Positions 3,783-62,570 of a DNA stretch of 64,000 bases are shown here, one piece after another (positions within the stretch are counted from its first letter, which is position 1; each line of letters starts with the position of its first letter). The DNA is taken from positions 1 through 64,000 of IMG/VR virus record IMGVR_UViG_3300020473_000011. One strand, given 5' to 3'. The notes below the pieces were generated by a model. That model searched no databases. It was not told where the DNA came from and worked only from the letters and a program-made list of their open reading frames with translations. The position numbers and the translations under genes were made by a program.

Positions 3783-3809
3783 CGTTGTACAAATAAAGTT
3801 TGTACAACG
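3783..3809. promoter_or_regulatory. Double TTGTACAA operator as an inverted repeat upstream of HU
   Basis: CGTTGTACAAA-TAAAG-TTTGTACAACG; a third site at 3898-3905. Confidence 0.6.
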
Positions 3810-3949
3810 TATTTAAAAACCCTTGTCAATGGTGCAGTTTTCTGAGAAAGTACGGCTCAAATAGGTTGTTGCCTATTCGAGACGTACGACCAAAGGGTTG
3901 TACAATGAGAATTGAGACTAATGATTAGGGCATTGCCCGAGGATTTCAA

Positions 3950-4228
3950 ATGAATAAAGCTGAATTGATCGCTGCTGTTGCAGACCGTACTGAAACTACT
4001 AAAGCTTCTGCCGAAGCAGCTGTAAACGCTGTATTTGGTGTTATCACTGATGAACTAGCTACAGGTAGCGGTGAAGTTAAAGTAGCAGGTTTCGGTAACT
4101 TCTCTAAAAAGCACAAAGCTGCACGCACTGGCCGTAACCCTCAAACGGGTGAAGCTGTTGAAATCGCAGCGCGTAATGCAGCTGGTTTCTCTGCTGCAAA
4201 AGGTCTTAAAGATTCAATCAACAGCTAA
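3950..4228 (+). CDS. hup: HU family DNA-binding protein
   Basis: MNKAELI...GFGNF...ARTGRNPQTGEAVEI...LKD signature. Confidence 0.97.
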   Translation: MNKAELIAAVADRTETTKASAEAAVNAVFGVITDELATGSGEVKVAGFGNFSKKHKAARTGRNPQTGEAVEIAARNAAGFSAAKGLKDSINS

Positions 4229-4336
4229 TCAGCCGTTGACTTTAAGATATAAGGTCAGCGCCCTAGCCTGTCCTTAATGCTAAACAGATTCCGTGGGTTT
4301 CGGCCTACGGAATTTGTCGTATCTGGGGGTCGATAA

Positions 4337-4546
4337 ATGCCTAAATGTAACAATGACCTATGCCCTATCGGCGCTACCTGCGCCAATCTAAGAACCACGC
4401 TTGATGAGAGCGCACTGTACTTCAACCCTGTCAACACAGGGCACGGTTACACCTGTCGAAATTATAAAGCGACGGTGCCCGTTAGGTCACGCCTGAGTAA
4501 CCGCACAAATACCTTAACTAATCAAAATAAAGAATTGAGACTATGA
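4337..4546 (+). CDS. Small Cys-containing hypothetical protein
   Basis: ORF coupled to the next gene; several Cys residues. Confidence 0.45.
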   Translation: MPKCNNDLCPIGATCANLRTTLDESALYFNPVNTGHGYTCRNYKATVPVRSRLSNRTNTLTNQNKELRL

Positions 4547-6018
4547 TGAGTAATAAAAACTACCTACACACGCTAGCTCAACGCATGTCTGAGCTAGCCG
4601 AAAGCCGACAACGGTGGGAAGCCCTTTACGGGATGGAAAATCAGGCAACTGCACTGATTGGGCTAATCGAAGAGCAAAACGGCTGGTTTGACTTCACTAA
4701 CATGTCTGTTGTGAAGCAACAACAAATACCTGATGGCACAGAGGTCATCATGTATGTAGACTCAATGAACACGTGGATGAGTGGCATCGTACGCGGATTT
4801 GTTACGACTGATAACGAAAGCTACGAGACGCACTACATTGTACAAGAAGAAGCTGTCCTAGCTTATGAAGCTGTCACCCCTACCCTGATTGCACCGCGCA
4901 AGATTGAAGACTACGTGGCAGGCTTAGAGGCTATCCTATCTGTAGAAATGCCAGACGTTACTGATTACATTTTCTGGAAGTTACCGCTTGAGTGCCGCTT
5001 AGGTAAAGTTAGTAAAGTTAAACTGGATGAATCTAACGATGTGGCGCGAGTAGACATATACAATGGTGTCACGACTGATACATTCCTTTACAACGTGGCA
5101 GGTGAACCCCTGTTCGTCAGCGACGAGCATCTTAGAGACGAAGGTCTGTATCTGCGCAATACCAAAGAGGCCATGGCTGAGGCTAGGTCACAGATATTTA
5201 AAGCCTTCTATGCACCTAATAGCCAGATAGCCTCGACTGATAAGTTTTCCAGAGTACGCGCTATGCTTTTAGCGATAGAGCGTCGGTCGCCGCCAGAGGG
5301 TGCTCTTGGGCTAAGCCCACAGCAAGTACAGACGGCATTGAGCTATCGAGACCGAAATCCTACGGCTGTTACGGCAATCCCTGATGAAAAAGCGTTAGGC
5401 TTTGTCATTCAAAGCTTTGGCTATTCCAATGCTTACACTAAGCTACGTCACCATAGGTCTCGGTTCCCTTGCGCTTTCGTTGCAAAGGATTCTGAAAGTT
5501 ATATGGTTGTCGATGCGATACCTGTCGGTAACTTTGAAGCCATTGCGTATGAATCACTTATTAATTATTTAGACCGTTGCCTTGCGAAGGCCACCCCCGA
5601 ACAAATTAGCCAAGCTGGCGAAGGCTATACTGAAAACGCTAAAGATGCTGCGTTAGTTACGGCCGTAATGGGGCTGCCTTTGTGCTGCGATGCAGGCGTG
5701 GTCGACCAACTCTTGGAGGTCGACCAAGGGGTCTATCGTTTGCAGCTGTCGAACAAGTCTACAACACTTGTCAACGCACCACTTGTCATTCATTACAACA
5801 GTGAGGGCTTGCCTTTAAACCCAGTACTGGCGAAGCTCACTGAGTTCCACCTTCGAAACCAAACCATGAACCGTGAACAAGTGGCGGTCTTTATTGAAAA
5901 TAAGCTACATCGCATGAGCGCAACCGTCGACAAGACAGCGCGCGATATTGTTACTGCACTCGAAAAAGCAGGCTTATTAAAATTCGATGATAATGGCGAG
6001 GTGGTACATGGCGGCTAA
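4543..6018 (+). CDS. Hypothetical protein
   Basis: 491-aa ORF in an operon. Confidence 0.75.
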   Translation: MMSNKNYLHTLAQRMSELAESRQRWEALYGMENQATALIGLIEEQNGWFDFTNMSVVKQQQIPDGTEVIMYVDSMNTWMSGIVRGFVTTDNESYETHYIVQEEAVLAYEAVTPTLIAPRKIEDYVAGLEAILSVEMPDVTDYIFWKLPLECRLGKVSKVKLDESNDVARVDIYNGVTTDTFLYNVAGEPLFVSDEHLRDEGLYLRNTKEAMAEARSQIFKAFYAPNSQIASTDKFSRVRAMLLAIERRSPPEGALGLSPQQVQTALSYRDRNPTAVTAIPDEKALGFVIQSFGYSNAYTKLRHHRSRFPCAFVAKDSESYMVVDAIPVGNFEAIAYESLINYLDRCLAKATPEQISQAGEGYTENAKDAALVTAVMGLPLCCDAGVVDQLLEVDQGVYRLQLSNKSTTLVNAPLVIHYNSEGLPLNPVLAKLTEFHLRNQTMNREQVAVFIENKLHRMSATVDKTARDIVTALEKAGLLKFDDNGEVVHGG

Positions 6019-6511
6019 TCTTTTTAAGCCACCTGCACAAACGCCAACAACAGGAAACCCGTCAGTCTTTTTGGCGGGTACCATCGACAATGGCAATAGT
6101 GCTGATTGGCAATCTGAACTTGTGGAGGCGCTAAGGTTATATGACGTCGACTTGTACAACCCGAGGCGTGAAGAATGGGACGCCAGTTGGGAGCAGTCTA
6201 TTCACAATCAAAATTTTAAGGAGCAAGTAACATGGGAACTCGACCACCTAGATAAGTGCGATATTATCTTCATGCACTTTGTTGGTGGAAGCCAATCACC
6301 GATCACGTTACTTGAGCTAGGTCTTTATGCCGAAAAGCGCCCTAAGAACTTGATGGTCGTATGTAGCCCTGATTTCTGGCGTAAGGGTAACGTTGAAGTC
6401 ATTGCGGAGCGCTATGGCATACCGTTGTACTACGATTTCACAAAAGCGACCCGAGCACTCAGGTCTAGGCTCTCGCCGTTGATACATAGTGCGAAAACCA
6501 CTGCACCCTAG
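6008..6511 (+). CDS. Nucleoside 2-deoxyribosyltransferase-like protein
   Basis: VFLAGTID..WQ, NPRR, QVTWELDHL and SPITLLELGL motifs; ATG 6008 preferred over track start 5987. Confidence 0.85.
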   Translation: MAANLFKPPAQTPTTGNPSVFLAGTIDNGNSADWQSELVEALRLYDVDLYNPRREEWDASWEQSIHNQNFKEQVTWELDHLDKCDIIFMHFVGGSQSPITLLELGLYAEKRPKNLMVVCSPDFWRKGNVEVIAERYGIPLYYDFTKATRALRSRLSPLIHSAKTTAP

Positions 6512-6552
6512 TGTCTTTTGACTTTACAAAGTAGCTGGACAAAGCCTATTAT

Positions 6553-10993: not shown

Positions 10994-11536
10994 TTATGCA
11001 ATGCACTCACCCGCTAATTGGTCTTCCCTACGAACGGCAAGTATGACCTCACGGGTCATAACCGCATCGGCTAAGGCTCGGTGAGCATCACCTTGGAACT
11101 CGATGCCGTACTGCTCGGCCACGTCGGTGAGCTTAGGCCACTTCGGATTAGGGTCAGTTCGCGTTTTCATGTAGTCATGCAGCCACTTCATAGCACAATC
11201 CCACTGCACGCCTTTTAAGCGTAAACCGTAAGCTTCTGCGGACTGTTTCATCATGCGTTTATCAAAAGTATGGTTGTAGGCAACCGCTGTCGTATCGGTC
11301 AAAATTCGTTGTACAATATGGTGGATGTCACCCCACGTGGGCGCATCTTTTACCATTTCTTCGGAGATACCATGCGTCTCAAGGGCGACCTTACTGATTG
11401 GTACACTAGGCTTAACTAGCGTGTCCAGCAGGACTAGACCTGTTTTTCCGTCAACCATGGAAATCTCGCAGACTTGTGAGTTTTTGTAGACACCCGTAGT
11501 CTCGGTGTCTAGCAAAACAATATTGCTAAGATCCAT
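10994..11536 (-). CDS. DEDDh 3'-5' exonuclease (DnaQ-like)
   Basis: LDTETTG, HGIS, YNHTFD, HRALAD. Confidence 0.92.
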   Translation of the reverse strand: MDLSNIVLLDTETTGVYKNSQVCEISMVDGKTGLVLLDTLVKPSVPISKVALETHGISEEMVKDAPTWGDIHHIVQRILTDTTAVAYNHTFDKRMMKQSAEAYGLRLKGVQWDCAMKWLHDYMKTRTDPNPKWPKLTDVAEQYGIEFQGDAHRALADAVMTREVILAVRREDQLAGECIA

Positions 11537-11758
11537 TGTATTCTCGTCTATCTATTCTCGTATCAATTAGGGCTGCATGGTAGCGTTAATTATGTTTTGC
11601 GTCAATCCAAAGTGCCTGTCGAGCAGTGCCTTTCAAATTCGTTGTACAATAAATTTCAAGGAAGGTATTGACCTTTTTAGTAACATGCGACAGACTATCC
11701 GAAACTAACCGAAATCGCTGCAATGCAGTGGAAAATAAAGAGACTGGATGTAGATAGT

Positions 11759-13991: not shown

Positions 13992-14879
13992 TTAAGTGTT
14001 CTTTATTTTTTTGTCAGCACAGTGCTTACGGCATCGTTGGCGCTGTTCTATCGCGGTGATACCACATAGGGTCGATACCTTTGCTAGCGTATCAATGGCT
14101 GTGCTGTCGCGGTCACCGATGTGCACCCAACCTTCATTAGTTAGCGTGTATTCGGCGTACGACTCTGAATCTGGCACCGCTACGAGCAATGTACGAGTAG
14201 CAGCTGACGGAGCGCCCTGCTCTTTTTCCAGATCATTGTAAAATGGACTTAGGTAACAGTTACTCACGTTGGTAAGTGCCCATGTGATCGGGTATTTACT
14301 ATCACACTTTGGACTTACTTTTAACTGTGCACTTAGGTCACTAAGGTTGGTCACGCTTTCGAGGATCGCAAGCATACTTACGCCGTACGCATGCCCGAGC
14401 TGAAAGGCTTCATCGAGTGTAATGTCGGTACTACGCTTAATCTCAAGGCTATTTAGACGCGCTTGCGTCAATCCTGTCGTAGAAGCAGCTTTGTACACAG
14501 TCATACACGCATTCTTTCTAAGAGCGATAAGGCGGTCACCTAGATTGTCGATCAACTGTAGCTTTACTGCCGAAAGCATACGCAGGAGCACGTCAACTGA
14601 CTTGTGGTTGTCGAAAAGCATCACGACCCTAGGAGCGTCGTCACAGCCTTCGATTTCTGCCCCTGTCGTTGTGTCACCTACACTAACAGTCCCATTGTTC
14701 TCACGAAACAAGATACCCTTCGCAGGATGGTCGCGAGCCTCGATCAAACCGAGTGTAATATTCCCGCTACCAAAGTGCATCGAGGTTAGGATTGAATGGC
14801 CATCAGGGTGTAACCCAAGCCCATATTCGAAGTTTCCATTGTAATTAAAGCCGTCAGTTTCTTTGTTGTTAGTTTCCAT
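13992..14879 (-). CDS. Protein with an internal XRE-type HTH
   Basis: LGDRLIALRK...GLTQARLNSLE...ITLDEAFQLGHAYGVS. Confidence 0.7.
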   Translation of the reverse strand: METNNKETDGFNYNGNFEYGLGLHPDGHSILTSMHFGSGNITLGLIEARDHPAKGILFRENNGTVSVGDTTTGAEIEGCDDAPRVVMLFDNHKSVDVLLRMLSAVKLQLIDNLGDRLIALRKNACMTVYKAASTTGLTQARLNSLEIKRSTDITLDEAFQLGHAYGVSMLAILESVTNLSDLSAQLKVSPKCDSKYPITWALTNVSNCYLSPFYNDLEKEQGAPSAATRTLLVAVPDSESYAEYTLTNEGWVHIGDRDSTAIDTLAKVSTLCGITAIEQRQRCRKHCADKKIKNT

Positions 14880-15252
14880 TGTACAAGTCTCTATTTATTT
14901 GTGATTCTAGACCCCATGACACGCTGTTAGTTAATGCGGACAGGTGTACCGCTACAGCTTGGCCATTCGGTAGCATATTGTGGGTGTCAAGCATAACGCG
15001 ACGCTTTAGGTCTTCCGTTATGTAAGGCAGTCCATGTAGGCGCTCAACTACTGCCTGATAGCTAACAGGCAGCACCAAGCAGTAACCTTCGTCAAAGTCT
15101 TCCCCTAACTTGGTGAATAAAGCTCGTACGGCTTCCTCAGCGACCTTCCGCTGTTTGGACAAATCTGGAACTAAGCTATATAGCTCGTCAAGGATTTCCG
15201 TAGCAGTTTTTGCAGGTGTATTGCATGTACTGTTTGTGGCTTTATTTAACAT
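14869..15252 (-). CDS. Hypothetical protein
   Basis: Start at MLNK overlapping the upstream stop; the track's longer start overlaps the HAD gene. Confidence 0.55.
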   Translation of the reverse strand: MLNKATNSTCNTPAKTATEILDELYSLVPDLSKQRKVAEEAVRALFTKLGEDFDEGYCLVLPVSYQAVVERLHGLPYITEDLKRRVMLDTHNMLPNGQAVAVHLSALTNSVSWGLESQINRDLYNGN

Positions 15253-17925: not shown

Positions 17926-18290
17926 GAGTATTCTCTCTATTTCATAAGTATCAATTTGGTGGCAGCAGTACTACCGCGTATTATCTTTAGTATCAATTGC
18001 AGCGGTCTAACCGCTGGCAGGCTTCTTCGCGCTATCGAGTGTGACAGCTCAAGCGACTGCGGGGCAGGATATTACGGTCACATGTAACTTATGTAAACCC
18101 TAAAATTGTAATTTTATTGAAAAAACCGCACGTACGCATAAATTGTGTACAACATTGTACAATGCTTGTACCATCTGACTTCACAGCGGATTCGTGATAG
18201 TCTTTCACTTTATGATTGTTGTACAAAACGAAACGCGCAACAAATATTTAACGACCTAATCAGCTGCAATGCAGTATATTAGGTATAGTT

Positions 18291-19004
18291 TTGAGTATAA
18301 GAAGGTATGCAATGAGAAATTCCAAGACTCAAGTCCATGAGGCCATGGCACTAGTCGAAACTAATAACATAGAGGCCATATTTGACACTAAAACGTCGAC
18401 TCTCTCAGTAAAGTCACCATACAGCCATGACCTTGTTAATGCGCTTGTTGAGTCTGGTTTAGGCTACTACGACGAGAAAGGCCAATCTTGGGTCTTCGCT
18501 TTAGAACAAATGGAAAGCGTTGTACAAACCTATAACGAGCACTATCCAGACCTTGATATGCCCTCGGCATTATTAAAAGGGGCACTAACAGAGGCCGACG
18601 CGACTGAGGTCGATGCTGAGTCTCAAGTGGCCATTGCGGAGATTGAGGGTATGGGCGACAAAGCTGCCTCTGTCTTTGCGCTCGCAGAGTCCTACGCACT
18701 AGCTGTAGGTCGCATTGTCCCAACGTTGGATCTTAATCTTGTTGCCGCTGTAGCACGCGATTTTGGCATCTACCCTATCGGGTGGGAAGACGATGTAACG
18801 AAGCTTAATTCTCTACTTTCAGTTGAGCGCTATACTAAAGACATGGCACAGGAAGATAAAAATAAGGTATTAGCCCTACAACGTTTCCTGAACGCCTTAG
18901 AAGAGGGTAAGTTCCGTGGTGTCTATTCCCGTGATGTACTTAACCACTTGGTCAAGCCTGCGGGTCTTGCTGTAACTAAGAACCTATACAACCCAAATTA
19001 CTAG
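18291..19004 (+). CDS. Hypothetical protein
   Basis: 237-aa ORF; start probably ATG 18312. Confidence 0.65.
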   Translation: MSIRRYAMRNSKTQVHEAMALVETNNIEAIFDTKTSTLSVKSPYSHDLVNALVESGLGYYDEKGQSWVFALEQMESVVQTYNEHYPDLDMPSALLKGALTEADATEVDAESQVAIAEIEGMGDKAASVFALAESYALAVGRIVPTLDLNLVAAVARDFGIYPIGWEDDVTKLNSLLSVERYTKDMAQEDKNKVLALQRFLNALEEGKFRGVYSRDVLNHLVKPAGLAVTKNLYNPNY

Positions 19005-19216
19005 AGACCTTAAAATTTTTGGAGTTATCCACCTTTCTTAGCGCAGGGTGCCCACACCGAGATTAGGTGTGGGTTGAATGCGCAAAATAATTGAAAATTA
19101 TTTTCCTAGGACTGACGCTAAGTCAATGGTGCGTAGGCATTTTCAACGAAAATAAGCCATTGCTTTGTACAATCTTTGTTGGTAAATTGAACTTAATCTA
19201 ACTAGGAATTACTCTT

Positions 19217-20455
19217 GTGAAAATACTTAAAGCGTTTCGTTACTTATTGGCTCCGACCGACGCCCAAGAAATCTTGTTTTACAAGATGGCGGGCTGTGGT
19301 CGTGTAGTTTATAACGACACGCTTGATTATTTGCTTAACATCATAAAGAAAGACCTAGGTATCACCGACCGAAAGGCATTGTACAAACATCTAAACAGCT
19401 TGGATTACAAAGCGCGTAAAGCGCTGTTTAGTAAGTTACCGCATCATTCGGCCATGAACAAACTGGTTACCGCTTGGAAAAAACTAGAACATCGCGAATG
19501 GCTCTCAGAAGCCTATCGCGATAATTTAGACCAACGCCAACGTGATTTACATAAAGCACTAGAGAAATGGTTGAAAGGCGCAGGGAGCTTCCCGCGCTTT
19601 AGGCAGCGCTCTACAGCCCATCACTCAACAATGCGCTTTGTGAACTTTAACAAATACTGCGCATTGCACGACAGTCGCGTCAAGTTGCCGAATAAGCTTG
19701 GCTTAGTTAAGTTCCGTAACTCACAACCAATCGAAGGCACACCGAAGAGTTGTACCGTTTCGCTTAACGCGTGTGGTCAATGGCACATTTCAATTCTTTG
19801 TGAACTCGAAGTATCTAAACCAATGCCTACGGCTGAGACAGCCGTAGGCATTGATATGGGTATTGCTAAAAACATGACCCTAAGTGACGGCACTGTTTAC
19901 AGTGGCGTCCACAGCTTCAAAGGTATTATGGGCAAGCTGGCCAAGTCGCAACGGAAGTTCGCCCGCCAAGAAAAAGGCTCAAACAACTGGAAGAAGCAAA
20001 AGTTAAAGATAGCTAAGCTTCACCAGAAAGCTGCGAACGCACGCAGAGACTTTCAACAAAAAGCCACGACCGAGATCAGCAAAAACCACGCAATGATAGT
20101 CGTTGAGGATTTGAAAGTTTCTAATATGTCACGCAGTGCAAAAGGTGACGCTGAAAACCACGGTAAAAACGTGAGGCAAAAGGCAGGACTAAACCGCTCT
20201 ATACTCGATCAGGGTTGGGGTGAAATTCGCCGACAGCTTGAATACAAGTCTGAATGGCTTGGCAACGTGTTTCATGCGGTACCACCGCACCACACGAGCC
20301 AGACGTGCCCTGCTTGTCGTCACAAAGCCAAAGAGAACCGATTGACACAAGCTGAGTTCATTTGTGTTGAGTGTGGTTTCAGCGAGAATGCCGACGTCGT
20401 CGGCGCTATCAACGTCTTACATCGCGGCATGGCCTTAGAGGCCAGCGCGAATTAG
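19217..20455 (+). CDS. tnpB: RNA-guided endonuclease TnpB (IS200/IS605 family)
   Basis: N-terminal HTH (KAFRYLLAPT), RuvC GIDMG / VVEDL / NADVVGAINV, zinc ribbon CPAC..CVEC. Confidence 0.95.
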   Translation: MKILKAFRYLLAPTDAQEILFYKMAGCGRVVYNDTLDYLLNIIKKDLGITDRKALYKHLNSLDYKARKALFSKLPHHSAMNKLVTAWKKLEHREWLSEAYRDNLDQRQRDLHKALEKWLKGAGSFPRFRQRSTAHHSTMRFVNFNKYCALHDSRVKLPNKLGLVKFRNSQPIEGTPKSCTVSLNACGQWHISILCELEVSKPMPTAETAVGIDMGIAKNMTLSDGTVYSGVHSFKGIMGKLAKSQRKFARQEKGSNNWKKQKLKIAKLHQKAANARRDFQQKATTEISKNHAMIVVEDLKVSNMSRSAKGDAENHGKNVRQKAGLNRSILDQGWGEIRRQLEYKSEWLGNVFHAVPPHHTSQTCPACRHKAKENRLTQAEFICVECGFSENADVVGAINVLHRGMALEASAN

Positions 20456-21341: not shown

Positions 21342-21497
21342 GTAGTTCTCTTCGTATCAATTACTGCGGCACAGGTATAATTAGACCTTGACGCTACTGG
21401 GCAGACCTTATAGGATCTTTCGTACTAAATCAAGACCGTTGTACAATATGCGTAGCGAAAGAAAGGCTACGGCGCAACCTAATACGAGACTAGAAAA

Positions 21498-27542: not shown

Positions 27543-27941
27543 TCAGACAAAGTCAGGTATCTTGCGCTTTATCCCACCTGACGGCTGCTTTGGTGTGATC
27601 CCTTTAACGGTTACATCACACGCTTTCTCAAACTCAAAGTTTTCTAGTTCCGTTCCTAGCTCTTCCTGAGACAGTACGATTGTATTGACCCGACGATAAG
27701 CATCCCGATAGCTTATCCCTGTCTCGTCCTCGACTTTGACCAGTACATCTTTTACGGCCTTATGTAAATCAAGCTGGGTTGATTCCTGTTTATAGCCCAC
27801 AGGGAACAAGAAATAGATGGTTGCGTCAGTACGTAGCCACTCGATTAGCTCATGGAGTTTTGGGAACCCTTTAACTATTGTGAAAAGCTTGTTGAGTTCC
27901 TTAATGTGGTAGTGCTTGTGGTCGGTCATATCGCTACCCAT
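27543..27941 (-). CDS. Hypothetical protein
   Basis: ORF in an operon. Confidence 0.6.
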   Translation of the reverse strand: MGSDMTDHKHYHIKELNKLFTIVKGFPKLHELIEWLRTDATIYFLFPVGYKQESTQLDLHKAVKDVLVKVEDETGISYRDAYRRVNTIVLSQEELGTELENFEFEKACDVTVKGITPKQPSGGIKRKIPDFV

Positions 27942-28719: not shown

Positions 28720-28884
28720 TACAGCCCAGTCGGTCTCGTCTCAGTTATTATCATTGTAGCATCAAGCGTTGTACAACAAAAAGTAAAACCCCAAAGCTGA
28801 GCGTGGTGCTCGTAGTTCAACGAGGGCTAACACTTTAGTGTGGTGCAGACTTGTACAACATAAATTTAACAAGAATCTACAGGT

Positions 28885-31183: not shown

Positions 31184-31222
31184 TTTACAGATAAAACTCT
31201 CCCCGTTATATTGTACAACGAA
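31184..31222 (+). promoter_or_regulatory. Promoter of the methyltransferase, with the TTGTACAA site over -10/+1
   Basis: TTTACA-17 bp-TATATT, then TTGTACAACGAA. Confidence 0.55.
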
Positions 31223-32935: not shown

Positions 32936-32988
32936 ACGTGCGCTGTACAGCAAATCGCGCCCACTTGTACAATAAACTCACCTAAACA

Positions 32989-33049
32989 GCTGCACTGCAA
33001 CCACTTATAGAAAATAATCGTTGTACAACGATATTGTTATTGCTATACT
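32989..33049 (+). promoter_or_regulatory. Regulon promoter module
   Basis: CTGCACTGCAA box, perfect ATCGTTGTACAACGAT, TTGTAC-17-TATACT. Confidence 0.75.
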
Positions 33050-34728: not shown

Positions 34729-34789
34729 GCTGCACCGTAAGGCTTTACATTAAATATCGTTGTACAATGATGTGCTTTGTTGTTATAGT
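34729..34789 (+). promoter_or_regulatory. Regulon promoter module
   Basis: CTGCACCGTAA box, ATCGTTGTACAATGAT, TTGTAC-18-TATAGT. Confidence 0.7.
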
Positions 34790-38306: not shown

Positions 38307-38325
38307 GTTGTACAATGAATTAAGT

Positions 38326-38401: not shown

Positions 38402-38412
38402 GCAATGAAAAG

Positions 38413-38496: not shown

Positions 38497-38502
38497 ATTG
38501 TT

Positions 38503-38590: not shown

Positions 38591-38599
38591 AATAATGTT

Positions 38600-38677: not shown

Positions 38678-38687
38678 ACACTAAAAG

Positions 38688-39553: not shown

Positions 39554-39979
39554 ATGTCGAATAGACAGGCTTCAACAAGTGTATTTTTAGAAGAGAATGT
39601 ATTACAAACAATAGTAGATGAGCGTCTTAACGCAAAACCCGAATTAGTTACAGCTTACAACTGCTTAGTAACTCTTCATCGTGATGTACACCGTATTGGG
39701 GACATTGTACAACCAGTGTCGCCACAACACAGTAGCATTATAGAAGAAGGGAACGCTGGGCTTGAACAAGCCGTCGACTTTTTCATTGAGGGCATCATAA
39801 CTAGAGACTTTCTCGATATTGTACAATTGACGTACGACAGTAATCGCTTGCACGAAACATACAATCACGTAGAACGAATTTTAATCAGTACGCTCGACGC
39901 GCGCTGTGTTGATGTGCAGGAGTTTAAACAAACACATGGAAAAGCATCCACTAAAAGTGCTATTCGATGTCATGGGTGA
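39554..39979 (+). CDS. Hypothetical protein
   Basis: 141-aa ORF with GAGG SD. Confidence 0.6.
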   Translation: MSNRQASTSVFLEENVLQTIVDERLNAKPELVTAYNCLVTLHRDVHRIGDIVQPVSPQHSSIIEEGNAGLEQAVDFFIEGIITRDFLDIVQLTYDSNRLHETYNHVERILISTLDARCVDVQEFKQTHGKASTKSAIRCHG

Positions 39980-41440: not shown

Positions 41441-41502
41441 CTGTGCCGCAGCATATTTCATTAAAAAAAATCATTGTACAATGATTTTTAACCTGATAAA
41501 GT
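41441..41502 (+). promoter_or_regulatory. Regulon promoter module
   Basis: CTGTGCCGCAG box, perfect 24-bp palindrome AAAAATCATTGTACAATGATTTTT, TTGTAC-17-TAAAGT. Confidence 0.75.
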
Positions 41503-41545
41503 ACACGCAACTAACCGATACACCGTTTTGATTAAGGACGTGACT

Positions 41546-42713: not shown

Positions 42714-42773
42714 CTGCACCGCAGCACTTTACATTAAAAAATCATTGTACAACGATTTTGGCTGTGCTACATT
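42714..42773 (+). promoter_or_regulatory. Regulon promoter module
   Basis: CTGCACCGCAG box, ATCATTGTACAACGAT, TTGTAC-17-TACATT. Confidence 0.75.
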
Positions 42774-44135: not shown

Positions 44136-44196
44136 TTGCAGCGCAGAAGTTTTTATCAATTAAATCGTTGTACAATAAATTGATAGCTGTTATATT
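44136..44196 (+). promoter_or_regulatory. Regulon promoter module
   Basis: TTGCAGCGCAG box, ATCGTTGTACAATAAAT, TTGTAC-17-TATATT. Confidence 0.7.
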
Positions 44197-44806: not shown

Positions 44807-44878
44807 TTACCCCGCAGCACTTTACATTGATAATTTTTATCAAAAAGTGTTGTACAATGATTTTTTGACTGCTATAGT
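44807..44878 (+). promoter_or_regulatory. Regulon promoter module
   Basis: TTACCCCGCAG box, GTGTTGTACAATGAT, TTGTAC-17-TATAGT. Confidence 0.7.
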
Positions 44879-44918
44879 CTGACCCAACTAACCAATTAAT
44901 AAAAATGAGACTTGACCG

Positions 44919-47080: not shown

Positions 47081-47470
47081 TTGAACAATGATGAGACACT
47101 GACAATGACTGATTACATGACGTCGGAAACTGCGACGCTTGTGATGCTCATTACCATCTTTGCTATCGGCCTTTACTCAATGATGAAATGGTTGTACAAA
47201 GCATCTGGTATATGGGTAACTAGCTTCCTATCGCGATACTTGCGTGGCATTTACTGGGTTAAAAGCCCCAAGGGCTTTATGCGCTTTAAAACACCTCAAA
47301 CAGCTCAAGAGTACGATAAGCTGCTAGATGTGATCCACCAGTTAGACTTAAAGCTTGTACGTGAAGGTATACTGCATGGTACGGCTAAAGCAATGCACAC
47401 CGATTTAGAGCACATGCTTGAGAGAGCGCCATTTGAGTACCGTAACGGTAAAGTGGTGGCCATCGCATGA
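47081..47470 (+). CDS. Membrane-anchored hypothetical protein
   Basis: N-terminal TM. Confidence 0.6.
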   Translation: MNNDETLTMTDYMTSETATLVMLITIFAIGLYSMMKWLYKASGIWVTSFLSRYLRGIYWVKSPKGFMRFKTPQTAQEYDKLLDVIHQLDLKLVREGILHGTAKAMHTDLEHMLERAPFEYRNGKVVAIA

Positions 47471-52550: not shown

Positions 52551-52594
52551 GTCGGTCTTCCTTTCGATAAATTGTGGTATCACTTTCTGAGGCC

Positions 52595-52656
52595 AATATA
52601 GCGCAGCCACTGCTAGTTGTACAACACTTTTTTGAGTGAAAGTCGCTGTATTGTAA
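52595..52656 (-). promoter_or_regulatory. Regulon promoter module (minus strand)
   Basis: TTACAATACAG box, GTGTTGTACAAC, TTGTAC-18-TATATT. Confidence 0.65.
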
Positions 52657-52776
52657 GGGATTTTGAAAGTATGCACCATTGGGTTCTTGGTATGCCCAGA
52701 CTTCATTGTACAAAGAAAAAAACCGCCAAGATGATCGGCGGTTTTGGTCGTTCTATATAGAGTTTCATGAAAACAA

Positions 52777-53417: not shown

Positions 53418-55451
53418 TTAGAATGTAACTTTAACTACGCGGTTAAATGAACCGCTAACTTTAACTAGTAACGCGTTGCGCTGCGTTGATGAAAAACCAA
53501 GACCGCTTAGCTGGTCATCTGTAGGGTCGGCCTTCAACTTAGAACCGAGTGCTTCAAATACCTTGCGGTGTTTGTTCAGTTCAGGTGCTAAGTTTTCGTT
53601 GTAGAATCCACGGATCTTGTCAGGTGACTGGCAGCCCTCTAGCATGAAGAAGAAGTGCTTATTACCAGTCTCTTCACCGTCCCAGTGGTTCGGTGAGTTC
53701 ATTACCATTGATACTTTTGACCATTGATGTGTGTTAACACCCCACTCTTGGCGTGAAGCCTCTGACCCTTTGATTGAGCTGATGATCTTGACGCCCTCAC
53801 TGTGCGAGTAGTCGAACTCAAGCACTATGATACTGCGGCCGTTTTGTAGTGCGTCTTTGTGTTCAAACTTAATGGTATTCCCGAAGTACTCAAATTCTAA
53901 AACAAAGCCAAAATCAATACGTTCACGTTGACGGAAGTTCTTCACCCGTACGCGATGGCGACCCTCTTGCATACGTGAACGGTCGGCATAGGCAATGTTT
54001 TCAACGGGTGTGCGTGAGTCGACACCCGTCGCGTTCATATCAATATCAAGGAACCCACCTGTGCGATAGCTTTTCTTGGAAGTAAAGTCGATCACATTAC
54101 CGTCAGGCTCTTCCATGCTAAGGTCTAAGTCGTCGCCATTGAACCATGCTAGAGAACTACGCACGTCCGCGTTGACATTACCGCCTGCGGCCTTAACCAA
54201 CTGGGTAATAGAAGCGTCGGCCAACTCGCCATTATAGCTCCAAGAGAAGTTGTTAGGCCACTTCAACATATTAGGCGCATCAGGGTACACAGGCGCAACA
54301 AGGCTGACCAGATTCGGCACATGTCGGTTTTCCATCATGACTTCAAGACTAGTGGCCTTTGGTAGCACATCTGCTACGAAGTCCTCAATGCTAATCTCTT
54401 CGACCTTATCGAACTTTTGCTTATTGTTGGCCTTTGTAGGCGCGAGAAGGTCAAGCGCATTACCCTTCATTTTCTTTTGAGCATCACGGTCGGCGAAGAG
54501 CACGTTATTCACTGTGATGTCTTCTAACCGAGCTGGGCGGCGGTAAAGCGAGTCTTCGAAGCCAAGCTGTATGATGGTCTCATTCGCTTCATCGATCTGC
54601 TTTTGTGTGATAAGGGCAGTTGGGCGCTTATAGTTCTCAGGCGCAACCTTCGCTTCATAAGATTTTACGGCATCTTCTAGGTCGCTGCCTTCGGAAAGGT
54701 CTGATAAGAGCGTCCCCATAGAAGTGTTGCGAAAACGGCCACTGTTACCAAGTTCTACAGACTTTTCCCAGAAAAACAGTTGTTCTTTTAGTGGGTCATC
54801 TAGTTTTTCTATGCGAGCGAACTCAGTTTTAACCTTAACGAGCGTGTCAACGATATGCTTGAACTCTTCACCGCGATACAAGGATCCCTGTGCAATTAGG
54901 TCACTTACTAACTCACACGAATAAAGGTCTACCTCACGTACGGAGCGCTCTAGTACCATTTTGTTAGCACGGGTGTCTGAAAGGTATGAGCCAGCCTCGG
55001 CATTTACAAACTTGTTAGGTAGGTCAAAATAGAAGTGTTCCCACTTCTTCTGTTCACCATTGGCCATAGGCTCAAAGTTGTGAGAAGTGCCCACGCGGGT
55101 TTCCCAGTGACGATACACATTCTGGATAGAGTCGCTATGTTGGCGTACGAAAAGGGAAAGTGCGTCAGCTACGGCCTGACGGAAGTCACTAAGCTCAATA
55201 TCCCACACTGTAACTAGTTTGCCATCAATGATAGCAATAACATTACCAATATTTCGGATGAAGTTGCGGCAGCAAGCGCAATCGTGTTCAGTACGTTCGC
55301 GATAAAGAGGGTTGGTGCCTTTAGGGAAGCTTGAAAGATATTCGTTGTACAACTCGTCTTTATTTAACTCGACGGTGTATAGCTCAGTGCTGTTTTCGGT
55401 CATATACGCTAACTGCGCATTAACAGCGTCACGCATGGCATTAAAGCTCAT
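53418..55451 (-). CDS. Large phage-type conserved protein (HxCxxC motif; DLDL/LDIDMN/PVENI domain)
   Basis: EHDCACCRNFI, WPNNFSWSYNG, DDLDL, LDIDMN, PVENI. Confidence 0.8.
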   Translation of the reverse strand: MSFNAMRDAVNAQLAYMTENSTELYTVELNKDELYNEYLSSFPKGTNPLYRERTEHDCACCRNFIRNIGNVIAIIDGKLVTVWDIELSDFRQAVADALSLFVRQHSDSIQNVYRHWETRVGTSHNFEPMANGEQKKWEHFYFDLPNKFVNAEAGSYLSDTRANKMVLERSVREVDLYSCELVSDLIAQGSLYRGEEFKHIVDTLVKVKTEFARIEKLDDPLKEQLFFWEKSVELGNSGRFRNTSMGTLLSDLSEGSDLEDAVKSYEAKVAPENYKRPTALITQKQIDEANETIIQLGFEDSLYRRPARLEDITVNNVLFADRDAQKKMKGNALDLLAPTKANNKQKFDKVEEISIEDFVADVLPKATSLEVMMENRHVPNLVSLVAPVYPDAPNMLKWPNNFSWSYNGELADASITQLVKAAGGNVNADVRSSLAWFNGDDLDLSMEEPDGNVIDFTSKKSYRTGGFLDIDMNATGVDSRTPVENIAYADRSRMQEGRHRVRVKNFRQRERIDFGFVLEFEYFGNTIKFEHKDALQNGRSIIVLEFDYSHSEGVKIISSIKGSEASRQEWGVNTHQWSKVSMVMNSPNHWDGEETGNKHFFFMLEGCQSPDKIRGFYNENLAPELNKHRKVFEALGSKLKADPTDDQLSGLGFSSTQRNALLVKVSGSFNRVVKVTF

Positions 55452-56401: not shown

Positions 56402-56679
56402 TGTCGTTTCCTTCTCTTCGGTTCGTTTAAGTATTCATTGTAAACGGCTGCATTGCAAGCGTTTACGTTTGATAGTGCTACTATAGCAGGTTGAATGTGA
56501 AACGCAACATCGTTGTACAATGATTTTCAAAAAAGTGAAGCTAATTCATTAGATTCAATGAATGGTTGTGCCGCAAGGGACACTCTGGTAATTTACGTCG
56601 GCCATAAAAGGCTGCACCCCAATGGTGTGAGCCGCATAACTGAGACGCTGACAACTGACACTAACGTGGAGACATCACT

Positions 56680-57057
56680 ATGAGAACTGAACGGGCTTAC
56701 CTCACAGCATCCAACAACCGCTGGGTCTTCTTACTGCTAATCTTTATCGTGGTAATACCGCTTTTGTACAACATTATCATGCCAATTGATAGAGAAGAGC
56801 CTGTGGCTACAAATGGCTCGACAATAGCGACAACAAGCACACTTAGCCTTAAAGACATCACGAAGAACATGAGCTTTGTATGCTTAAACGATTATGTCTA
56901 CATGCACCCGAAGGGCTACCCACGAGCTTTAGAGCCTGTCCTAATTAATGGCAATGACATAAGTACAGGTGCAAGGCTTATCCCATGCGATGACTATGAA
57001 CTTGTGTACAATGCTGTTCTGAGTGTTGAGGATGCCATGGGGAAGGGCAATGAATAA
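56680..57057 (+). CDS. Membrane-anchored hypothetical protein
   Basis: N-terminal TM; GGAG SD. Confidence 0.65.
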   Translation: MRTERAYLTASNNRWVFLLLIFIVVIPLLYNIIMPIDREEPVATNGSTIATTSTLSLKDITKNMSFVCLNDYVYMHPKGYPRALEPVLINGNDISTGARLIPCDDYELVYNAVLSVEDAMGKGNE

Positions 57058-58083: not shown

Positions 58084-58300
58084 CTAAATTCGCTAAACCC
58101 TCGTAAATATTGTACAACAATAGTACGAAACGGCCTATGGCGCAAGCATTTTGGCACCTAATATACAGTACTTTGATCAGTGTTTGTCTTAAACTGACCC
58201 AACGAACTAATGGTGCTGCTTCGAATATTTCGATTATTGACTTCGCTGCTATTTCAACTATTATTCCGCCCTACATTTATAGAGTAGACGGTTAATTGAT

Positions 58301-61722: not shown

Positions 61723-61772
61723 CTTATCAGTGTATCGGTTCTATTCCGCTGCATGGCAGCGGTTTATGACGA

Positions 61773-61802
61773 TACTATAAGCTATCATTGTACAATGATC
61801 AA
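61773..61802 (-). promoter_or_regulatory. Recombinase promoter with the operator in the spacer
   Basis: TTGATC-17 bp-TATAGT overlapping perfect ATCATTGTACAATGAT (61784-61799). Confidence 0.7.
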
Positions 61803-61805
61803 GAC

Positions 61806-62120
61806 CTATTTACGAATTAGTGTACAACTCTCAACCTTGCAGCTAATAACATATTCTTCATGGAAGTCGAACTCAACCTCGCGCAGGAAGTCTTCTTGGT
61901 CAAGGTGTGAGTCAACTTCGGCAATTAGATAGATCTCACCTTGACCGTCATTGCTGTGCACATCAACGTCGTATAGGTCAGCGTCACTAAGGTGAGGCGG
62001 CGTTGTACCCTTCTCATATAGCTCTAGTTCATCTTGCAGCACTGAAACAACGCGGTCAGGGCACATTACTTCTAGGCGTGTTGCTAGCTTTAGCAGCACG
62101 CGAAAACGATTGTTATTCAT
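61806..62120 (-). CDS. Acidic hypothetical protein
   Basis: 104-aa ORF. Confidence 0.55.
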   Translation of the reverse strand: MNNNRFRVLLKLATRLEVMCPDRVVSVLQDELELYEKGTTPPHLSDADLYDVDVHSNDGQGEIYLIAEVDSHLDQEDFLREVEFDFHEEYVISCKVESCTLIRK

Positions 62121-62146
62121 CAGTAGTCTCTCTTATTTTAAAATTC

Positions 62147-62392
62147 TTATTTTTCTTCAACCCAAGGGTGCGTTACGCCATACTCAACTGACATTTTCTG
62201 TTTAAATACAGTATCAGGCTTCGCCAAGGCAATTTCATTCTCTTCAAAGCGGTCATCGCGTACAGAGAAGTACTTGTCGAATAATCGTTTTGGAATGCGC
62301 ATTGCGGCCATGGCTTTAGGCTTGCTTGTTGCTGCCACCATGAAATTATTCACGCCGTCTTTGCTTCCATAGAATACTTTTAGCTTTGCCAT
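62147..62392 (-). CDS. Hypothetical protein
   Basis: Start MAKLKVF after AAGGGA SD. Confidence 0.6.
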   Translation of the reverse strand: MAKLKVFYGSKDGVNNFMVAATSKPKAMAAMRIPKRLFDKYFSVRDDRFEENEIALAKPDTVFKQKMSVEYGVTHPWVEEK

Positions 62393-62510
62393 GAGGCTGT
62401 TCCCTTTAGTTGGTATTGTCTGTAAAAGGCTGCGGGGCAACCGACTTGGCACAAATTTATAGAATCGTTGTACAACCGTCAAGTTTTATTTATGTTTTAA
62501 ATGAAAGTAG

Positions 62511-62570
62511 CTGCGCCGCAACGCTTTTCATTCAAAAAGTGTTGTACAACGATGTGAGTGATGCTATAGT
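62511..62570 (+). promoter_or_regulatory. Regulon promoter module
   Basis: CTGCGCCGCAA box, GTGTTGTACAACGAT, TTGTAC-17-TATAGT. Confidence 0.75.

What the first reader, a model, noticed from the sequence alone, without database searches (positions are those of the whole stretch)
3783..62570. Replicon-wide regulon built on the palindrome (A)TCRTTGTACAAYGA(T)
Seen: by eye about 26 intergenic TTGTACAA sites (e.g. 3785, 3800, 3898, 11642, 18155, 19165, 21439, 28769, 31211, 33021, 34760, 38308, 41474, 42745, 44168, 44850, 52617, 56513, 58110, 61788, 62542) plus about ten in coding sequence. Chance expectation for an 8-mer is roughly 1-2 at about 55% AT. At 33021, 41474, 42745, 44168, 44850 and 62542, TTGTAC sits 17 bp before a TGn-extended -10 and serves as the -35. 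At 19165 and 61788 the palindrome lies in the spacer, and at 31211 over -10/+1. Variable position relative to the promoter argues for a dimeric repressor site. Inference: a master regulator of establishment or early genes, analogous to KorA/KorC or ArdK-CUP regulons. The regulator is unidentified.
Basis: partly seen in the sequence, partly recalled or inferred. Interest (0 to 1): 0.7.

Follow-up and report, generated by a model that had tools for sequence, protein, structure and literature searches.

The report
Genome-wide palindromic operator in giant phage
An invariant 8-base palindrome (TTGTACAA, inside a looser 18-base palindrome) sits in most promoter regions of a roughly 416-kb marine giant phage, at a few fixed positions relative to ordinary bacterial promoter elements, so it is most likely the docking site of one still-unidentified protein that controls transcription of the whole genome.

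Summary
TTGTACAA occurs 37 times in the window against 1.7 expected, and 149 times in the 281.6-kb contig. About 8 more occur per 10 kb beyond both contig ends.

- **Motif shape.** The consensus is AATCR-TTGTACAA-YGATT. The 8-bp core tolerates essentially no mismatch, the flanks are soft, and the two half-sites vary independently.
- **Location.** Sites lie in 25 of 29 divergent gaps and about 46 of 80 long co-directional gaps. They lie in only 2 of 19 convergent gaps.
- **Registers.** About 35 sites sit at fixed positions in sigma-70-type promoters: as the -35 with a TG-extended -10 (13-20 sites), filling the spacer (9), or just upstream of the -35 (about 8). The rest have no recognisable partner element.
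- **Conservation.** Two diverged relatives keep the motif.
- **Replicon.** It is not a plasmid. It is a marine jumbo myophage, probably of Pseudoalteromonas, whose longer assemblies carry a ParA-like gene.
- **Scope.** Sites also precede structural and tRNA genes, so this is not an "establishment" regulon.

The best reading is an operator for a symmetric sequence-specific protein acting genome-wide. Whether it represses, activates or both is not shown, and the regulator remains unidentified. Two candidates, a HigA-like XRE protein and a ParA-linked putative ribbon-helix-helix protein, are each weakly supported and each contradicted on one point.

The parts
3785..3792 (.). Site 1 of 3 upstream of the HU-like gene (3950-4228).
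   Evidence: Exact match; intergenic. The HU-like identification rests on the Pfam annotation of the longer contig.
3800..3807 (.). Site 2 of 3 upstream of the HU-like gene. It aligns with a TTGTACAA in the P. umbrosa relative within sequence that is only 47% identical overall.
3898..3905 (.). Site 45 nt before the HU-like start codon, with TACAAT facing the gene and no sigma-70 partner element.
4838..4845 (.). In-gene copy with weak flanks; possibly not functional.
6152..6159 (.). In-gene copy with weak flanks.
11309..11316 (.). Copy inside ORF 10994-11536(-); the left half-flank is good.
11642..11649 (.). Site in a divergent intergenic gap, 106 and 110 nt from the two start codons.
14879..14886 (.). 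Site overlapping the start codon of 13992-14879(-), in the arrangement GAGAC-TTGTACA-ATG.
18155..18162 (.). Site in a divergent gap.
18219..18226 (.). Site 86 nt upstream of 18312(+).
18520..18527 (.). In-gene copy.
19165..19172 (.). Palindrome in the spacer of TTGCTT-17-TAAATT (TG-extended), 45 nt upstream of the tnpB-like gene.
19379..19386 (.). In-gene copy, within the tnpB-like gene.
21439..21446 (.). Site in a divergent gap, 98 and 52 nt from the two start codons.
28769..28776 (.). Site 83 nt upstream of 27934-28686(-).
28851..28858 (.). Distal partner of 28769, 82 bp away.
31211..31218 (.). Site overlapping a TATATT and lying 23 nt upstream of a TTGCGC-17-TATACT promoter (class C).
32965..32972 (.). 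Distal site, 56 bp upstream of 33021.
33021..33049 (+). Class A promoter: TTGTAC as the -35, 17 bp, then TG-extended TATACT.
34760..34789 (+). Class A promoter: the palindrome at the -35, then TG-extended TATAGT, then an ACTAACCGAT leader.
38308..38315 (.). Site between tRNA-Cys and tRNA-Trp within a six-tRNA cluster on the minus strand.
39705..39712 (.). In-gene copy (39554-39979).
39819..39826 (.). In-gene copy (39554-39979).
41466..41509 (+). Class A promoter. A near-perfect 22-bp palindrome is centred on 41477/41478, the -10 TAAAGT lies at 41497-41502, and RNA contigs start at 41509, the first base of the AACTAACCGAT leader.
42745..42773 (+). Class A promoter: full 18-bp palindrome, 17 bp, then TG-extended TACATT. 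My gene calls wrongly placed it in coding sequence.
44168..44196 (+). Class A promoter: TTGTAC, 17 bp, then TG-extended TATATT, then an ACTGACCGAT leader.
44850..44878 (+). Class A promoter: TTGTAC, 17 bp, then TG-extended TATAGT, then an AACTAACCAAT leader.
47192..47199 (.). In-gene copy with weak flanks.
52617..52624 (.). Copy inside the 5' part of 51831-52706(-).
52706..52713 (.). Site overlapping the start codon of 51831-52706(-), read as TTGTACA-ATG.
55345..55352 (.). Copy about 100 nt inside the 5' end of 53418-55451(-).
56513..56520 (.). Site with good flanks in a divergent gap.
56764..56771 (.). In-gene copy.
58110..58117 (.). Site in a divergent gap, 42 and 184 nt from the two start codons.
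61788..61795 (.). Palindrome in the spacer of TTGATC-17-TATAGT on the minus strand, 78 nt upstream of 60691-61710(-).
62468..62475 (.). Site in a divergent gap, 74 bp from 62542.
62542..62570 (+). Class A promoter: TTGTAC, 17 bp, then TG-extended TATAGT, upstream of 62610(+).

Best explanation
TTGTACAA, with its soft AATCR/YGATT flanks, is the binding site (operator) of one symmetric, probably dimeric, sequence-specific DNA-binding protein that acts on most transcription units of a roughly 416-kb marine jumbo myophage. The phage transcribes many genes from sigma-70-type promoters.

Shown: the site is built into these promoters at discrete registers. It is centred near -31.5 where it replaces the -35 hexamer, near -22 where it fills the spacer, and near -46 just upstream of the -35. 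It also lies directly before many genes that have no recognisable sigma-70 elements.

Inferred: a protein bound at -31.5 or -22 must collide with RNA polymerase, so those roughly 30 promoters are most likely repressed by it. At the partner-less sites, including those in front of virion genes, it may instead be needed for transcription. The likeliest overall role is therefore a genome-wide switch. This could be a lysis/latency immunity repressor of a ParA-bearing episomal phage, or a temporal early-to-late switch.

Not shown: that any protein binds, the sign of regulation, and the identity of the protein.
For: - **Enrichment.** 37 sites against 1.7 expected in the window; 149 in the contig, against 17 for the next palindromic 8-mer.
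- **Promoter linkage.** Sites are present in 25 of 29 divergent gaps of at least 50 bp and in about 46 of 80 co-directional gaps of at least 100 bp. They are present in only 2 of 19 convergent gaps. The median distance to the start codon is 77 nt.
- **Symmetry.** The consensus is the same on both sides when sites are oriented by the downstream gene. The R/Y positions vary independently: 24 GG, 16 AA and 61 mixed.
- **Fixed registers.** -10 hexamers pile up at +23 (11 sites) and +13 (9 sites) against about 1.5 expected. The independent consensus scanner calls four class A promoters in the window.
- **RNA.** Metatranscriptome contigs from two runs of one sample start at 41509, which is 7 nt after the -10 of the class A promoter at 41474. 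Silent stretches elsewhere show the signal is RNA and not DNA.
- **Conservation.** A 4.3-kb contig with 29-60% protein identity keeps three TTGCAA-tca-TTGTACAA-cgat-TATACT promoters. A Pseudoalteromonas umbrosa relative with 66-72% nucleotide identity has 11 sites in 20.5 kb, its commonest palindromic 8-mer.
- **Not a host regulon.** Three Alteromonadales genomes each have only 1-2 extended sites.
- **Precedent for the site shape.** HigA-type XRE dimers read a compact central palindrome with loosely specific flanks (PMC6987408). A gut-metagenome element carries 3-4 TCATTGTACAATGA boxes directly upstream of a small ribbon-helix-helix gene.
Against: - No binding protein is identified and no binding was tested.
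- The core is invariant: 149 exact copies, while the 12 one-mismatch variants sit near background. That is stricter than typical operator sets and more like a promoter -10 element or an enzyme recognition site.
- About 80 intergenic sites have no sigma-70 partner. In many of them TACAAT faces the gene 30-45 nt before the start codon, which suits a promoter role.
- RNA contigs reach to within 11 nt and 18 nt of such sites at 127721 and 132281.
- Neighbouring sites show no helical phasing and no excess of close pairs, so there is no sign of cooperative binding.
Confidence: 0.6

Rival explanations
1. The palindrome is itself a core promoter element, read by a phage-directed form of RNA polymerase such as a phage sigma-like factor or a sigma appropriator (as T4 uses TATAAATA or the MotA box). 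It would not be an operator for a separate regulator.
For: - The 8-bp core is invariant, as in T4 late promoters.
- Most sites have no other recognisable promoter element.
- TACAAT faces the gene at most gene-proximal sites in the virion-gene region.
- The most highly expressed gene seen, 127246-127680(-), is preceded only by such a site, and an RNA contig reaches to 11 nt from it.
- Class A geometry, with the box centred at -31.5 and a sigma-70 -10 downstream, resembles T4 middle promoters.
- The T4-type late motif TATAAATA is rare, with 10 copies.
Against: - A palindrome with palindromic flanks cannot by itself set direction.
- In 9 promoters it lies between a good -35 and a good -10 at a 16-18 bp spacing, where it cannot be the recognised promoter element.
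- At class A promoters the RNA 5' end follows the downstream -10, not the palindrome.
- No sigma-70 region 2 protein is found in the 281 kb. One third of the genome was not examined.
Confidence: 0.2
2. The sites are read by a host (Pseudoalteromonas-type) transcription factor that the phage exploits.
For: - The 18-mer occurs in two Pseudoalteromonas genomes and one Catenovulum genome among only 29 hits in 185,579 species genomes.
- TTGTACAATGA lies 10 nt after the -10 of a chromosomal HigA-like gene in two Pseudoalteromonas species.
Against: - Host genomes hold only 1-2 extended sites each, about the same as the reversed-pattern control.
- The chromosomal copies lie at the end of an island inserted in a miaE-like gene, which is mobile DNA and not a host regulon.
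Confidence: 0.07
3. The motif hitch-hikes on mobile promoter-terminator cassettes (like the PeSL elements of T4-type phages) that spread by recombination, and has no binding function of its own.
For: Class B promoters are near-identical units. Each is preceded by a GCAGTCG(T)TTTT terminator and followed by an A(C/T)TAACCGAT leader, and they are repeated through 111-124 kb.
Against: - The same core occurs in at least four different promoter contexts, before tRNA genes and before virion genes, with unrelated surrounding sequence.
- It is retained in relatives whose surrounding sequence has diverged to 47-76% identity.
Confidence: 0.05
4. It is an epigenetic or enzyme recognition site, for example the target of the phage C-5 cytosine methyltransferase (GTAC or TGTACA) or of a site-specific nuclease or nickase.
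For: - The invariant palindromic 8-mer is typical of enzyme sites.
- A DNA_methylase (C-5) gene is present.
Against: - It gives no explanation for the fixed promoter registers, the avoidance of convergent gaps, or the semi-conserved flanks.
- The target sequence of the methyltransferase is unknown.
Confidence: 0.05
5. It acts as an RNA or DNA hairpin, for example as a terminator, a processing site or a cruciform.
For: It is a perfect inverted repeat, and some sites lie within larger hairpins, for example at 132281.
Against: - The R/Y flank positions do not covary. Mixed pairs are in excess: 61 observed against 50 expected.
- There is no T-run after the site.
- It is nearly absent from convergent gaps, where terminators sit.
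Confidence: 0.03

Closest known systems
Phage P1 C1 repressor and its dispersed operators (from my own knowledge of P1, not tested here)
   Same: One phage-encoded protein has many operators scattered over a large genome of an episomal (ParA-bearing) phage, overlapping promoters of many operons.
   Different: P1 operators are asymmetric 17-mers, number around 20, and do not sit directly at late structural promoters. Here the site is a perfect palindrome, present about 150 times in 281 kb, and also found in front of virion and tRNA genes. No C1 homologue was sought.
RK2/IncP KorA, KorB and KorC global regulons
   Same: Short palindromic operators recur across a replicon at different positions relative to promoters. 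In RK2 a partition-linked protein (KorB) doubles as a global regulator. Here a ParA-like operon with a putative ribbon-helix-helix gene exists just outside the window.
   Different: The replicon is a phage, not a conjugative plasmid. The operator sequence is different. No KorA or ParB_N domain was detected. There are about ten times more sites. The par operon promoter has no TTGTACAA.
T4 middle promoters (MotA box at -30 plus a sigma-70 -10)
   Same: In the 13-20 class A promoters the box replaces the -35 hexamer and is centred near -31.5, with a good, often TG-extended, -10.
   Different: The box is palindromic. It occurs at other registers too, and no MotA or AsiA family hit appeared in the Pfam surveys.
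Mycobacteriophage L5 gp71 'stoperators' (from my own knowledge)
   Same: Tens of identical repressor sites are spread over the whole phage genome.
   Different: Stoperators are asymmetric, orientation-dependent and lie within transcribed regions. Here the sites are symmetric and tied to promoter-bearing gaps.
HigA-type XRE operators (PaHigA, TTAAC|GTTAA; PMC6987408)
   Same: A compact central palindrome is essential, and the flanks are needed but loosely specific. PaHigA also regulates genes beyond its own operon. The phage encodes a HigA-like protein at 123917-124285.
   Different: That protein's own promoter carries a different inverted repeat, TAACCTnnnAGGTTA, found nowhere else in the genome. 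It therefore looks like a local autoregulator.

Membership tests
RK2-type Kor regulon (KorA/KorB/KorC) | A KorA (PF16509) or ParB-type KorB protein is encoded on the replicon. | tested here: not met
   PF02195 gave no match at E<=1. PF16509 gave only an 11.8-bit hit inside a generic XRE gene. The missing third of the genome was not searched.
RK2-type Kor regulon (KorA/KorB/KorC) | The replicon is a conjugative plasmid backbone carrying replication, transfer and stable-inheritance operons. | tested here: not met
   Tail sheath, baseplate gp25/gp5-like and virion proteins are present. The record is classed as viral.
ArdK-CUP regulon (IncN) | Long conserved upstream repeats (CUP) carry the promoter. 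| tested here: not met
   Only about 18 bp is shared across contexts, and the flanking sequence is unrelated. The class B subfamily alone shares longer cassettes.
Operator of a dimeric repressor (generic) | The site has dyad symmetry with independently varying half-sites. | tested here: met
Operator of a dimeric repressor (generic) | The site overlaps core promoter elements. | tested here: met
   This holds for about 30 sites (classes A and B). It cannot be assessed for about 80 sites that have no recognisable sigma-70 elements.
Operator of a dimeric repressor (generic) | A cognate protein binds the site and lowers transcription. | not testable with these tools
No binding or expression assay was possible.
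T4-type middle promoter (MotA/AsiA sigma appropriation) | An activator box centred near -30 replaces the -35, with a sigma-70 -10 downstream. | tested here: inconclusive
   The geometry is met at 13-20 class A sites, but the same box occurs at other registers.
T4-type middle promoter (MotA/AsiA sigma appropriation) | MotA and AsiA homologues are encoded. | tested here: not met
   No such family appeared among all Pfam hits at E<=1e-4 for 327 proteins of 45-420 aa. One third of the genome was unseen.
T4-type late promoter | TATAAATA lies upstream of virion genes. | tested here: not met
   There are only 10 copies in 281 kb, 6 of them intergenic.
Ribbon-helix-helix box arrays (omega, ParG, MetJ type) | Short 7-8-bp boxes occur in abutting tandem arrays. 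| tested here: not met
   Sites are mostly single. Pair spacings of 15-98 bp are irregular and no more frequent than chance.
Ribbon-helix-helix box arrays (omega, ParG, MetJ type) | An RHH protein is encoded, typically next to ParA, and is autoregulated through the same boxes. | tested here: inconclusive
   A 196-aa protein downstream of ParA has a strand-helix-helix pattern at residues 27-71 and a weak HicB hit at E=0.007 (model pLDDT only 44). No TTGTACAA lies upstream of the par operon.
HigA-family XRE regulator as the binder | The protein belongs to the HigA family. | tested here: met
   HTH_3 hit; homologues named HigA family; PDB HigA hits at E about 2e-5.
HigA-family XRE regulator as the binder | Its own promoter carries the operator. 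| tested here: not met
   Its own promoter, TTGACG-17-TAAGAT, has no TTGTACAA. It is flanked by two copies of TAACCTnnnAGGTTA that are unique in the genome.

The most novel reading that the evidence does not exclude
One invariant 8-bp palindrome forms a private transcription code for a roughly 416-kb ParA-bearing megaphage. A single symmetric factor would silence sigma-70-type early promoters where the box fills the spacer or replaces the -35. The same factor would be the essential recruiting element at about 80 promoters, including those of virion genes, that have no other recognisable signal. Register alone would then decide repression or activation across roughly 220 sites.
Probability: 0.2. 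Interest if true: 0.8.

Novelty: new variant of a known kind. Interest (0 to 1): 0.6.

Why it matters
How jumbo phages that lack their own multisubunit RNA polymerase programme several hundred genes is largely unknown. Here one short motif marks most transcription units, and it sits at defined registers in otherwise ordinary promoters. That gives a directly testable handle on the whole programme through one pull-down and one TSS map. A related element occurs in a sequencing run of a Pseudoalteromonas umbrosa sample, so the experiment may be feasible in culture. If the longer assemblies with ParA reflect an episomal lifestyle, this would be the immunity network of a very large phage-plasmid.

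Tried and rejected
- **Plasmid identity.** Rejected. There are no megablast hits in plasmids or phages, and virion genes are present.
- **Close relatives by protein.** The sheath protein found none in IMG/VR, and the best match in the phage collection is 39% identical. The XRE-122 profile found none in IMG/VR.
- **Motif scans of IMG/VR and GTDB genomes.** These returned only single hits, at about the number expected by chance, with no blastn match to the phage.
- **Helical phasing or clustering of neighbouring sites.** Not significant.
- **Hairpin covariation.** Absent.
- **RNA contig ends as transcription start sites.** Most contig starts lie inside genes and are assembly breaks. Only the 41509 coincidence is worth citing, and it comes from two runs of one sample.
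- **Families searched and not found in the 281 kb.** GntR, sigma-70 region 2, RHH_1, Arc and ParB_N.
- **Gut-element RHH protein.** It has no detectable homologue in the phage.
- **Protein-DNA complex prediction.** The job was not folded, so it is no evidence either way.
- **AlphaFold model of the 196-aa protein.** Its confidence is too low (pLDDT 44) for a fold search.
- **Tissierellia 30-bp perfect palindrome containing the 18-mer, beside an XRE gene.** This is a probable real operator in an unrelated organism, and it is not informative for this phage.
- **Literature.** A search for the motif with 'phage' found nothing relevant.

Full report
**1. Observation**

TTGTACAA occurs 37 times in the 64-kb window. 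Dinucleotide-preserving shuffles give a mean of 1.69 and never more than 7.

The window is the first 64 kb of a single 281,557-bp contig with 47.7% G+C. That contig holds 149 copies. TTGTACAA is the commonest 8-mer of any kind in it, and the next palindromic 8-mer has 17 copies.

Aligning all copies gives AATCR-TTGTACAA-YGATT. The core is essentially invariant. The twelve canonical one-mismatch variants together total 165 copies, near background, with only 31 intergenic. Between ATCR and YGAT flanks the core is TTGTACAA in 20 of 34 cases, and every other filling occurs once. Flanks of intergenic sites score 6.5 out of 10 on average against a background of 3.0. They are only slightly weaker in the virion-gene region, at 6.05.

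**2. What the replicon is**

It is not a plasmid. Large ORFs match tail sheath and virion structural PHROGs. Pfam finds baseplate gp25, T4_baseplate, sheath initiator and gp5-like OB domains. The record is an IMG/VR virus record rated 67% complete. It recurs in marine metagenomes and metatranscriptomes.

Assemblies of 416-419.5 kb contain the whole contig. Beyond both ends the motif continues at 8 sites per 10 kb. This implies roughly 220 sites in the full genome, which is an extrapolation.

Just upstream of window position 1 those assemblies encode a ParA-type ATPase, a 665-aa protein and a 196-aa protein. An episomal lifestyle is therefore possible but not shown.

The closest homologues of one phage gene are chromosomal Pseudoalteromonas genes, and one assembly is labelled Aestuariibacter. 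The host is therefore probably an Alteromonadales bacterium, which is an inference.

**3. Where the sites lie**

The figures in this section depend on my own rough gene calls.

- 111 of 149 sites are intergenic, although only about 13% of the DNA is non-coding.
- At least six 'coding' sites with strong flanks are really promoters that my calls mis-assigned.
- By type of gap, the motif is present in 25 of 29 divergent gaps of at least 50 bp and in about 46 of 80 co-directional gaps of at least 100 bp.
- It is present in only 2 of 19 convergent gaps. Those two are a tRNA cluster and a 2-kb non-coding stretch.
- The median distance from a site to the start codon it faces is 77 nt.
- Sites also precede tRNA clusters and virion genes.

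The motif therefore belongs to promoter-bearing DNA throughout the genome.

**4. Registers relative to promoter elements**

Strong -10 hexamers accumulate at +23 (11 sites) and +13 (9 sites) from the first T of the core, against about 1.5 expected at random intergenic positions. Explicit pattern searches give three classes.

| Class | Arrangement | Number | Examples |
|---|---|---|---|
| A | TTGTAC, 17 bp, then a -10 that is often TGnTATAGT | about 20, of which 13 convincing | window: 33021, 34760, 41474, 42745, 44168, 44850, 62542 |
| B | TTGCAA or TTGACA, the palindrome filling a 16-18-bp spacer, then TATACT | 9 | all between 111 and 134 kb |
| C | the palindrome about 20 nt upstream of a TTGnnn-17-TAnnnT promoter | about 8, some by chance | window: 31211 |

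The consensus scanner independently reports TGTACA, 16-17 nt, TATAnT with TG at 33022, 34761, 44169 and 44851.

Class A and class B promoters share a conserved leader, A(C/T)TAACCGAT, at +1 to +10. Class B promoters are each preceded by a GCAGTCG(T)TTTT terminator.

Roughly 80 intergenic sites have no recognisable sigma-70 partner. In many gene-proximal ones TACAAT faces the gene.

**5. Symmetry**

When sites are oriented by the downstream gene, both flanks show the same consensus. The purine and pyrimidine positions next to the core vary independently: 24 sites are G/G, 16 are A/A and 61 are mixed, with no preference for complementary pairs. This argues against a hairpin and against a directional promoter element. 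It argues for a protein with two equivalent subunits. Neighbouring sites show no helical phasing and are no more often paired than chance predicts.

**6. RNA evidence (weak)**

Only assembled contigs of one marine metatranscriptome sample were available.

- In both runs a contig begins at 41509. That is the A seven nucleotides after the TAAAGT -10 of the class A promoter at 41474, and the first base of the conserved leader.
- Stretches with zero depth (43601-44400, 128001-129800, 132601-133000) show that the signal is RNA and not contaminating DNA.
- Downstream of the class B promoter at 132744 there is no RNA.
- The gene behind the partner-less site at 127721 has the highest depth seen, and a contig reaches to 11 nt from that palindrome.
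- Most other contig ends fall inside genes and are assembly breaks, so these points are suggestive only.

**7. Conservation**

- A 4.3-kb metagenome contig is syntenic with 115-119.7 kb at 29-60% protein identity. It carries three TTGTACAA sites. Two sit in class B promoters (TTGCAA, the palindrome, then TATACT), one of them with the leader, and the third lies between TTGACA and a -10-like element.
- A relative in a Pseudoalteromonas umbrosa sequencing run has 66-72% nucleotide identity in shared genes. It has 11 copies in 20.5 kb, its commonest palindromic 8-mer, and 7 of them are intergenic.
- Upstream of the HU-like gene the two phages are only 47% identical, yet both keep TTGTACAA sites.
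- In the P. umbrosa relative the AATCR/YGATT flanks are much weaker, so the core is the conserved unit.
- Three Alteromonadales genomes hold only 1-2 extended sites each. Scans of IMG/VR and of 185,579 species genomes return only single hits.

**8. Who binds it?**

This is not resolved. The Pfam survey of 327 proteins found four to seven XRE-type HTH proteins, an HU-like protein, an HTH_17 protein and an Aca2-like protein. It found no sigma factor, GntR, RHH or ParB domain.

*Candidate 1: the HigA-like protein at 123917-124285.*

- For: three of about 50 unrelated metagenome loci retrieved only by the 18-mer encode homologues of it.
- For: in two Pseudoalteromonas species the orthologue's promoter has TTGTACAATGA ten nucleotides after the -10. 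A third species has a 7-of-8 match.
- For: HigA proteins are known to read a compact central palindrome with loosely specific flanks (PMC6987408).
- Against: the element is deleted in another orthologue and absent from more distant ones.
- Against: the recognition helix differs between the subfamilies that co-occur with the motif.
- Against: in chromosomes the 18-mer marks the end of an island inserted in a miaE-like gene.
- Against: the phage gene's own promoter has no TTGTACAA. It is bracketed by two copies of TAACCTnnnAGGTTA that occur nowhere else in the genome. That is the expected look of a local autoregulator.

*Candidate 2: the 196-aa protein downstream of ParA, outside the window.*

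- For: its N-terminal pattern RLTVRIP, helix, helix is conserved in six homologues and has a weak HicB hit at E=0.007.
- For: ribbon-helix-helix proteins read short boxes. An unrelated gut-metagenome element has 3-4 TCATTGTACAATGA boxes directly upstream of a small gene with the same pattern.
- Against: the model is of low confidence, with pLDDT 44.
- Against: the DNA-facing strand residues differ from those of the gut protein.
- Against: the par operon promoter lacks the motif.

The complex predictor would not fold protein with DNA. One third of the genome was not examined.

**9. Mechanism**

*Shown:* a symmetric, strictly conserved site is built into promoter regions genome-wide, at a few discrete registers in sigma-70-type promoters, and is conserved in relatives.

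*Inferred:*

- A dimeric protein binds the site.
- At about -22 and -31.5 it must exclude RNA polymerase, so it would repress there.
- At partner-less sites it may be required for transcription.

I put 0.6 on a genome-wide operator for a symmetric regulator, with the sign of regulation unresolved. I put 0.2 on the box being a core promoter element of a phage-directed polymerase. The remainder is split among a host factor, hitch-hiking on promoter cassettes, an enzyme or methylation site, and a hairpin.

**10. Comparison and novelty**

It works most like the dispersed operator networks of phage P1 (C1), mycobacteriophage L5 (stoperators) and plasmid RK2 (Kor proteins). For class A promoters it also resembles T4 MotA-dependent promoters. 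It is not a member of any of these, because the defining proteins or site properties were tested and not met.

The scale, the invariance of the core and the use of several registers make it a new variant of a known kind. The finding is real and interesting, but the central claim of regulation by a bound protein still rests on sequence anatomy alone.

Noticed in passing
whole contig; e.g. window 3909-3916, 44907-44912: AAnTGAGAC lies 0-25 nt (median about 9) before the start codon of about 75 genes. 88 of 211 TGAGAC copies are intergenic. It looks like a non-canonical ribosome-binding or leader element rather than a Shine-Dalgarno sequence.
   Followed up: partly
window 41509-41519, 44886-44896, 34790-34805; G000 111826, 114850, 117855: A conserved leader, A(C/T)TAACCGAT, sits at +1 to +10 of class A and class B promoters. 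It also occurs close to some start codons without a promoter. It may be an initial-transcribed or translation-enhancing element.
   Followed up: partly
G000 124695-124760 (L004:4695-4760): Two copies of the inverted repeat TAACCTnnnAGGTTA, unique in the genome, bracket the TTGACG-17-TAAGAT promoter of the operon encoding the HigA-like XRE protein. This is probably a separate local operator.
   Followed up: yes
window 38232-38776; G000 198756-198966, 200667-201226, 202692-202768: There are 14 tRNA genes in four clusters. Palindromes lie upstream of, or inside, the clusters.
   Followed up: partly
G000 148660-150772: A 2.1-kb stretch with no ORF lies between convergent genes. It holds four TTGTACAA sites and repeated CTGACCCGAGG(G/T)CAG hairpin-like units. 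It could be an origin or non-coding RNA genes.
   Followed up: no
window 19217-20455: A TnpB (IS605 OrfB/Cas12f-like) gene sits inside the phage genome, with a palindrome in the spacer of its putative promoter.
   Followed up: no
whole contig (positions not mapped): The phage encodes an unusual set of host-like RNA and translation factors: ribosome hibernation factor (Ribosomal_S30AE), ArfA, Hfq-like, ProQ/FinO-like, tRNA nucleotidyltransferase and RNA-repair HAD/PNKP domains. It also has a CheW-like domain and a C-5 DNA methylase.
   Followed up: no
L131:4228-8003 (about 5.4 to 1.6 kb before window position 1 in the 416-kb assemblies): A ParA-type ATPase (392 aa) is followed by a 665-aa protein and a 196-aa putative ribbon-helix-helix protein. 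The operon is conserved in the P. umbrosa relative. It suggests plasmid-like maintenance of a roughly 416-kb phage.
   Followed up: partly
L033:6412-7656, L038:6317-7334, L030: In Alteromonadales chromosomes the same 18-mer, preceded by CATTAC, lies where a miaE-like gene is interrupted. In L033 a 288-aa YagK/YfjJ-like gene follows, of the same length and position as one that elsewhere precedes a HigA-like plus HD_4 gene pair. It may be the end of a mobile island.
   Followed up: partly
L075:6675-6780, L064:1794-1868, L051, L059: Unrelated gut-metagenome contigs carry 3-4 TCATTGTACAATGA boxes within about 100 bp directly upstream of a small ribbon-helix-helix gene. This is an independent use of the same box.
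   Followed up: partly
G000 111-124 kb: Repeated units of terminator (GCAGTCG(T)TTTT), class B promoter and small ORF resemble the PeSL promoter-stem-loop cassettes of T4-type phages.
   Followed up: no
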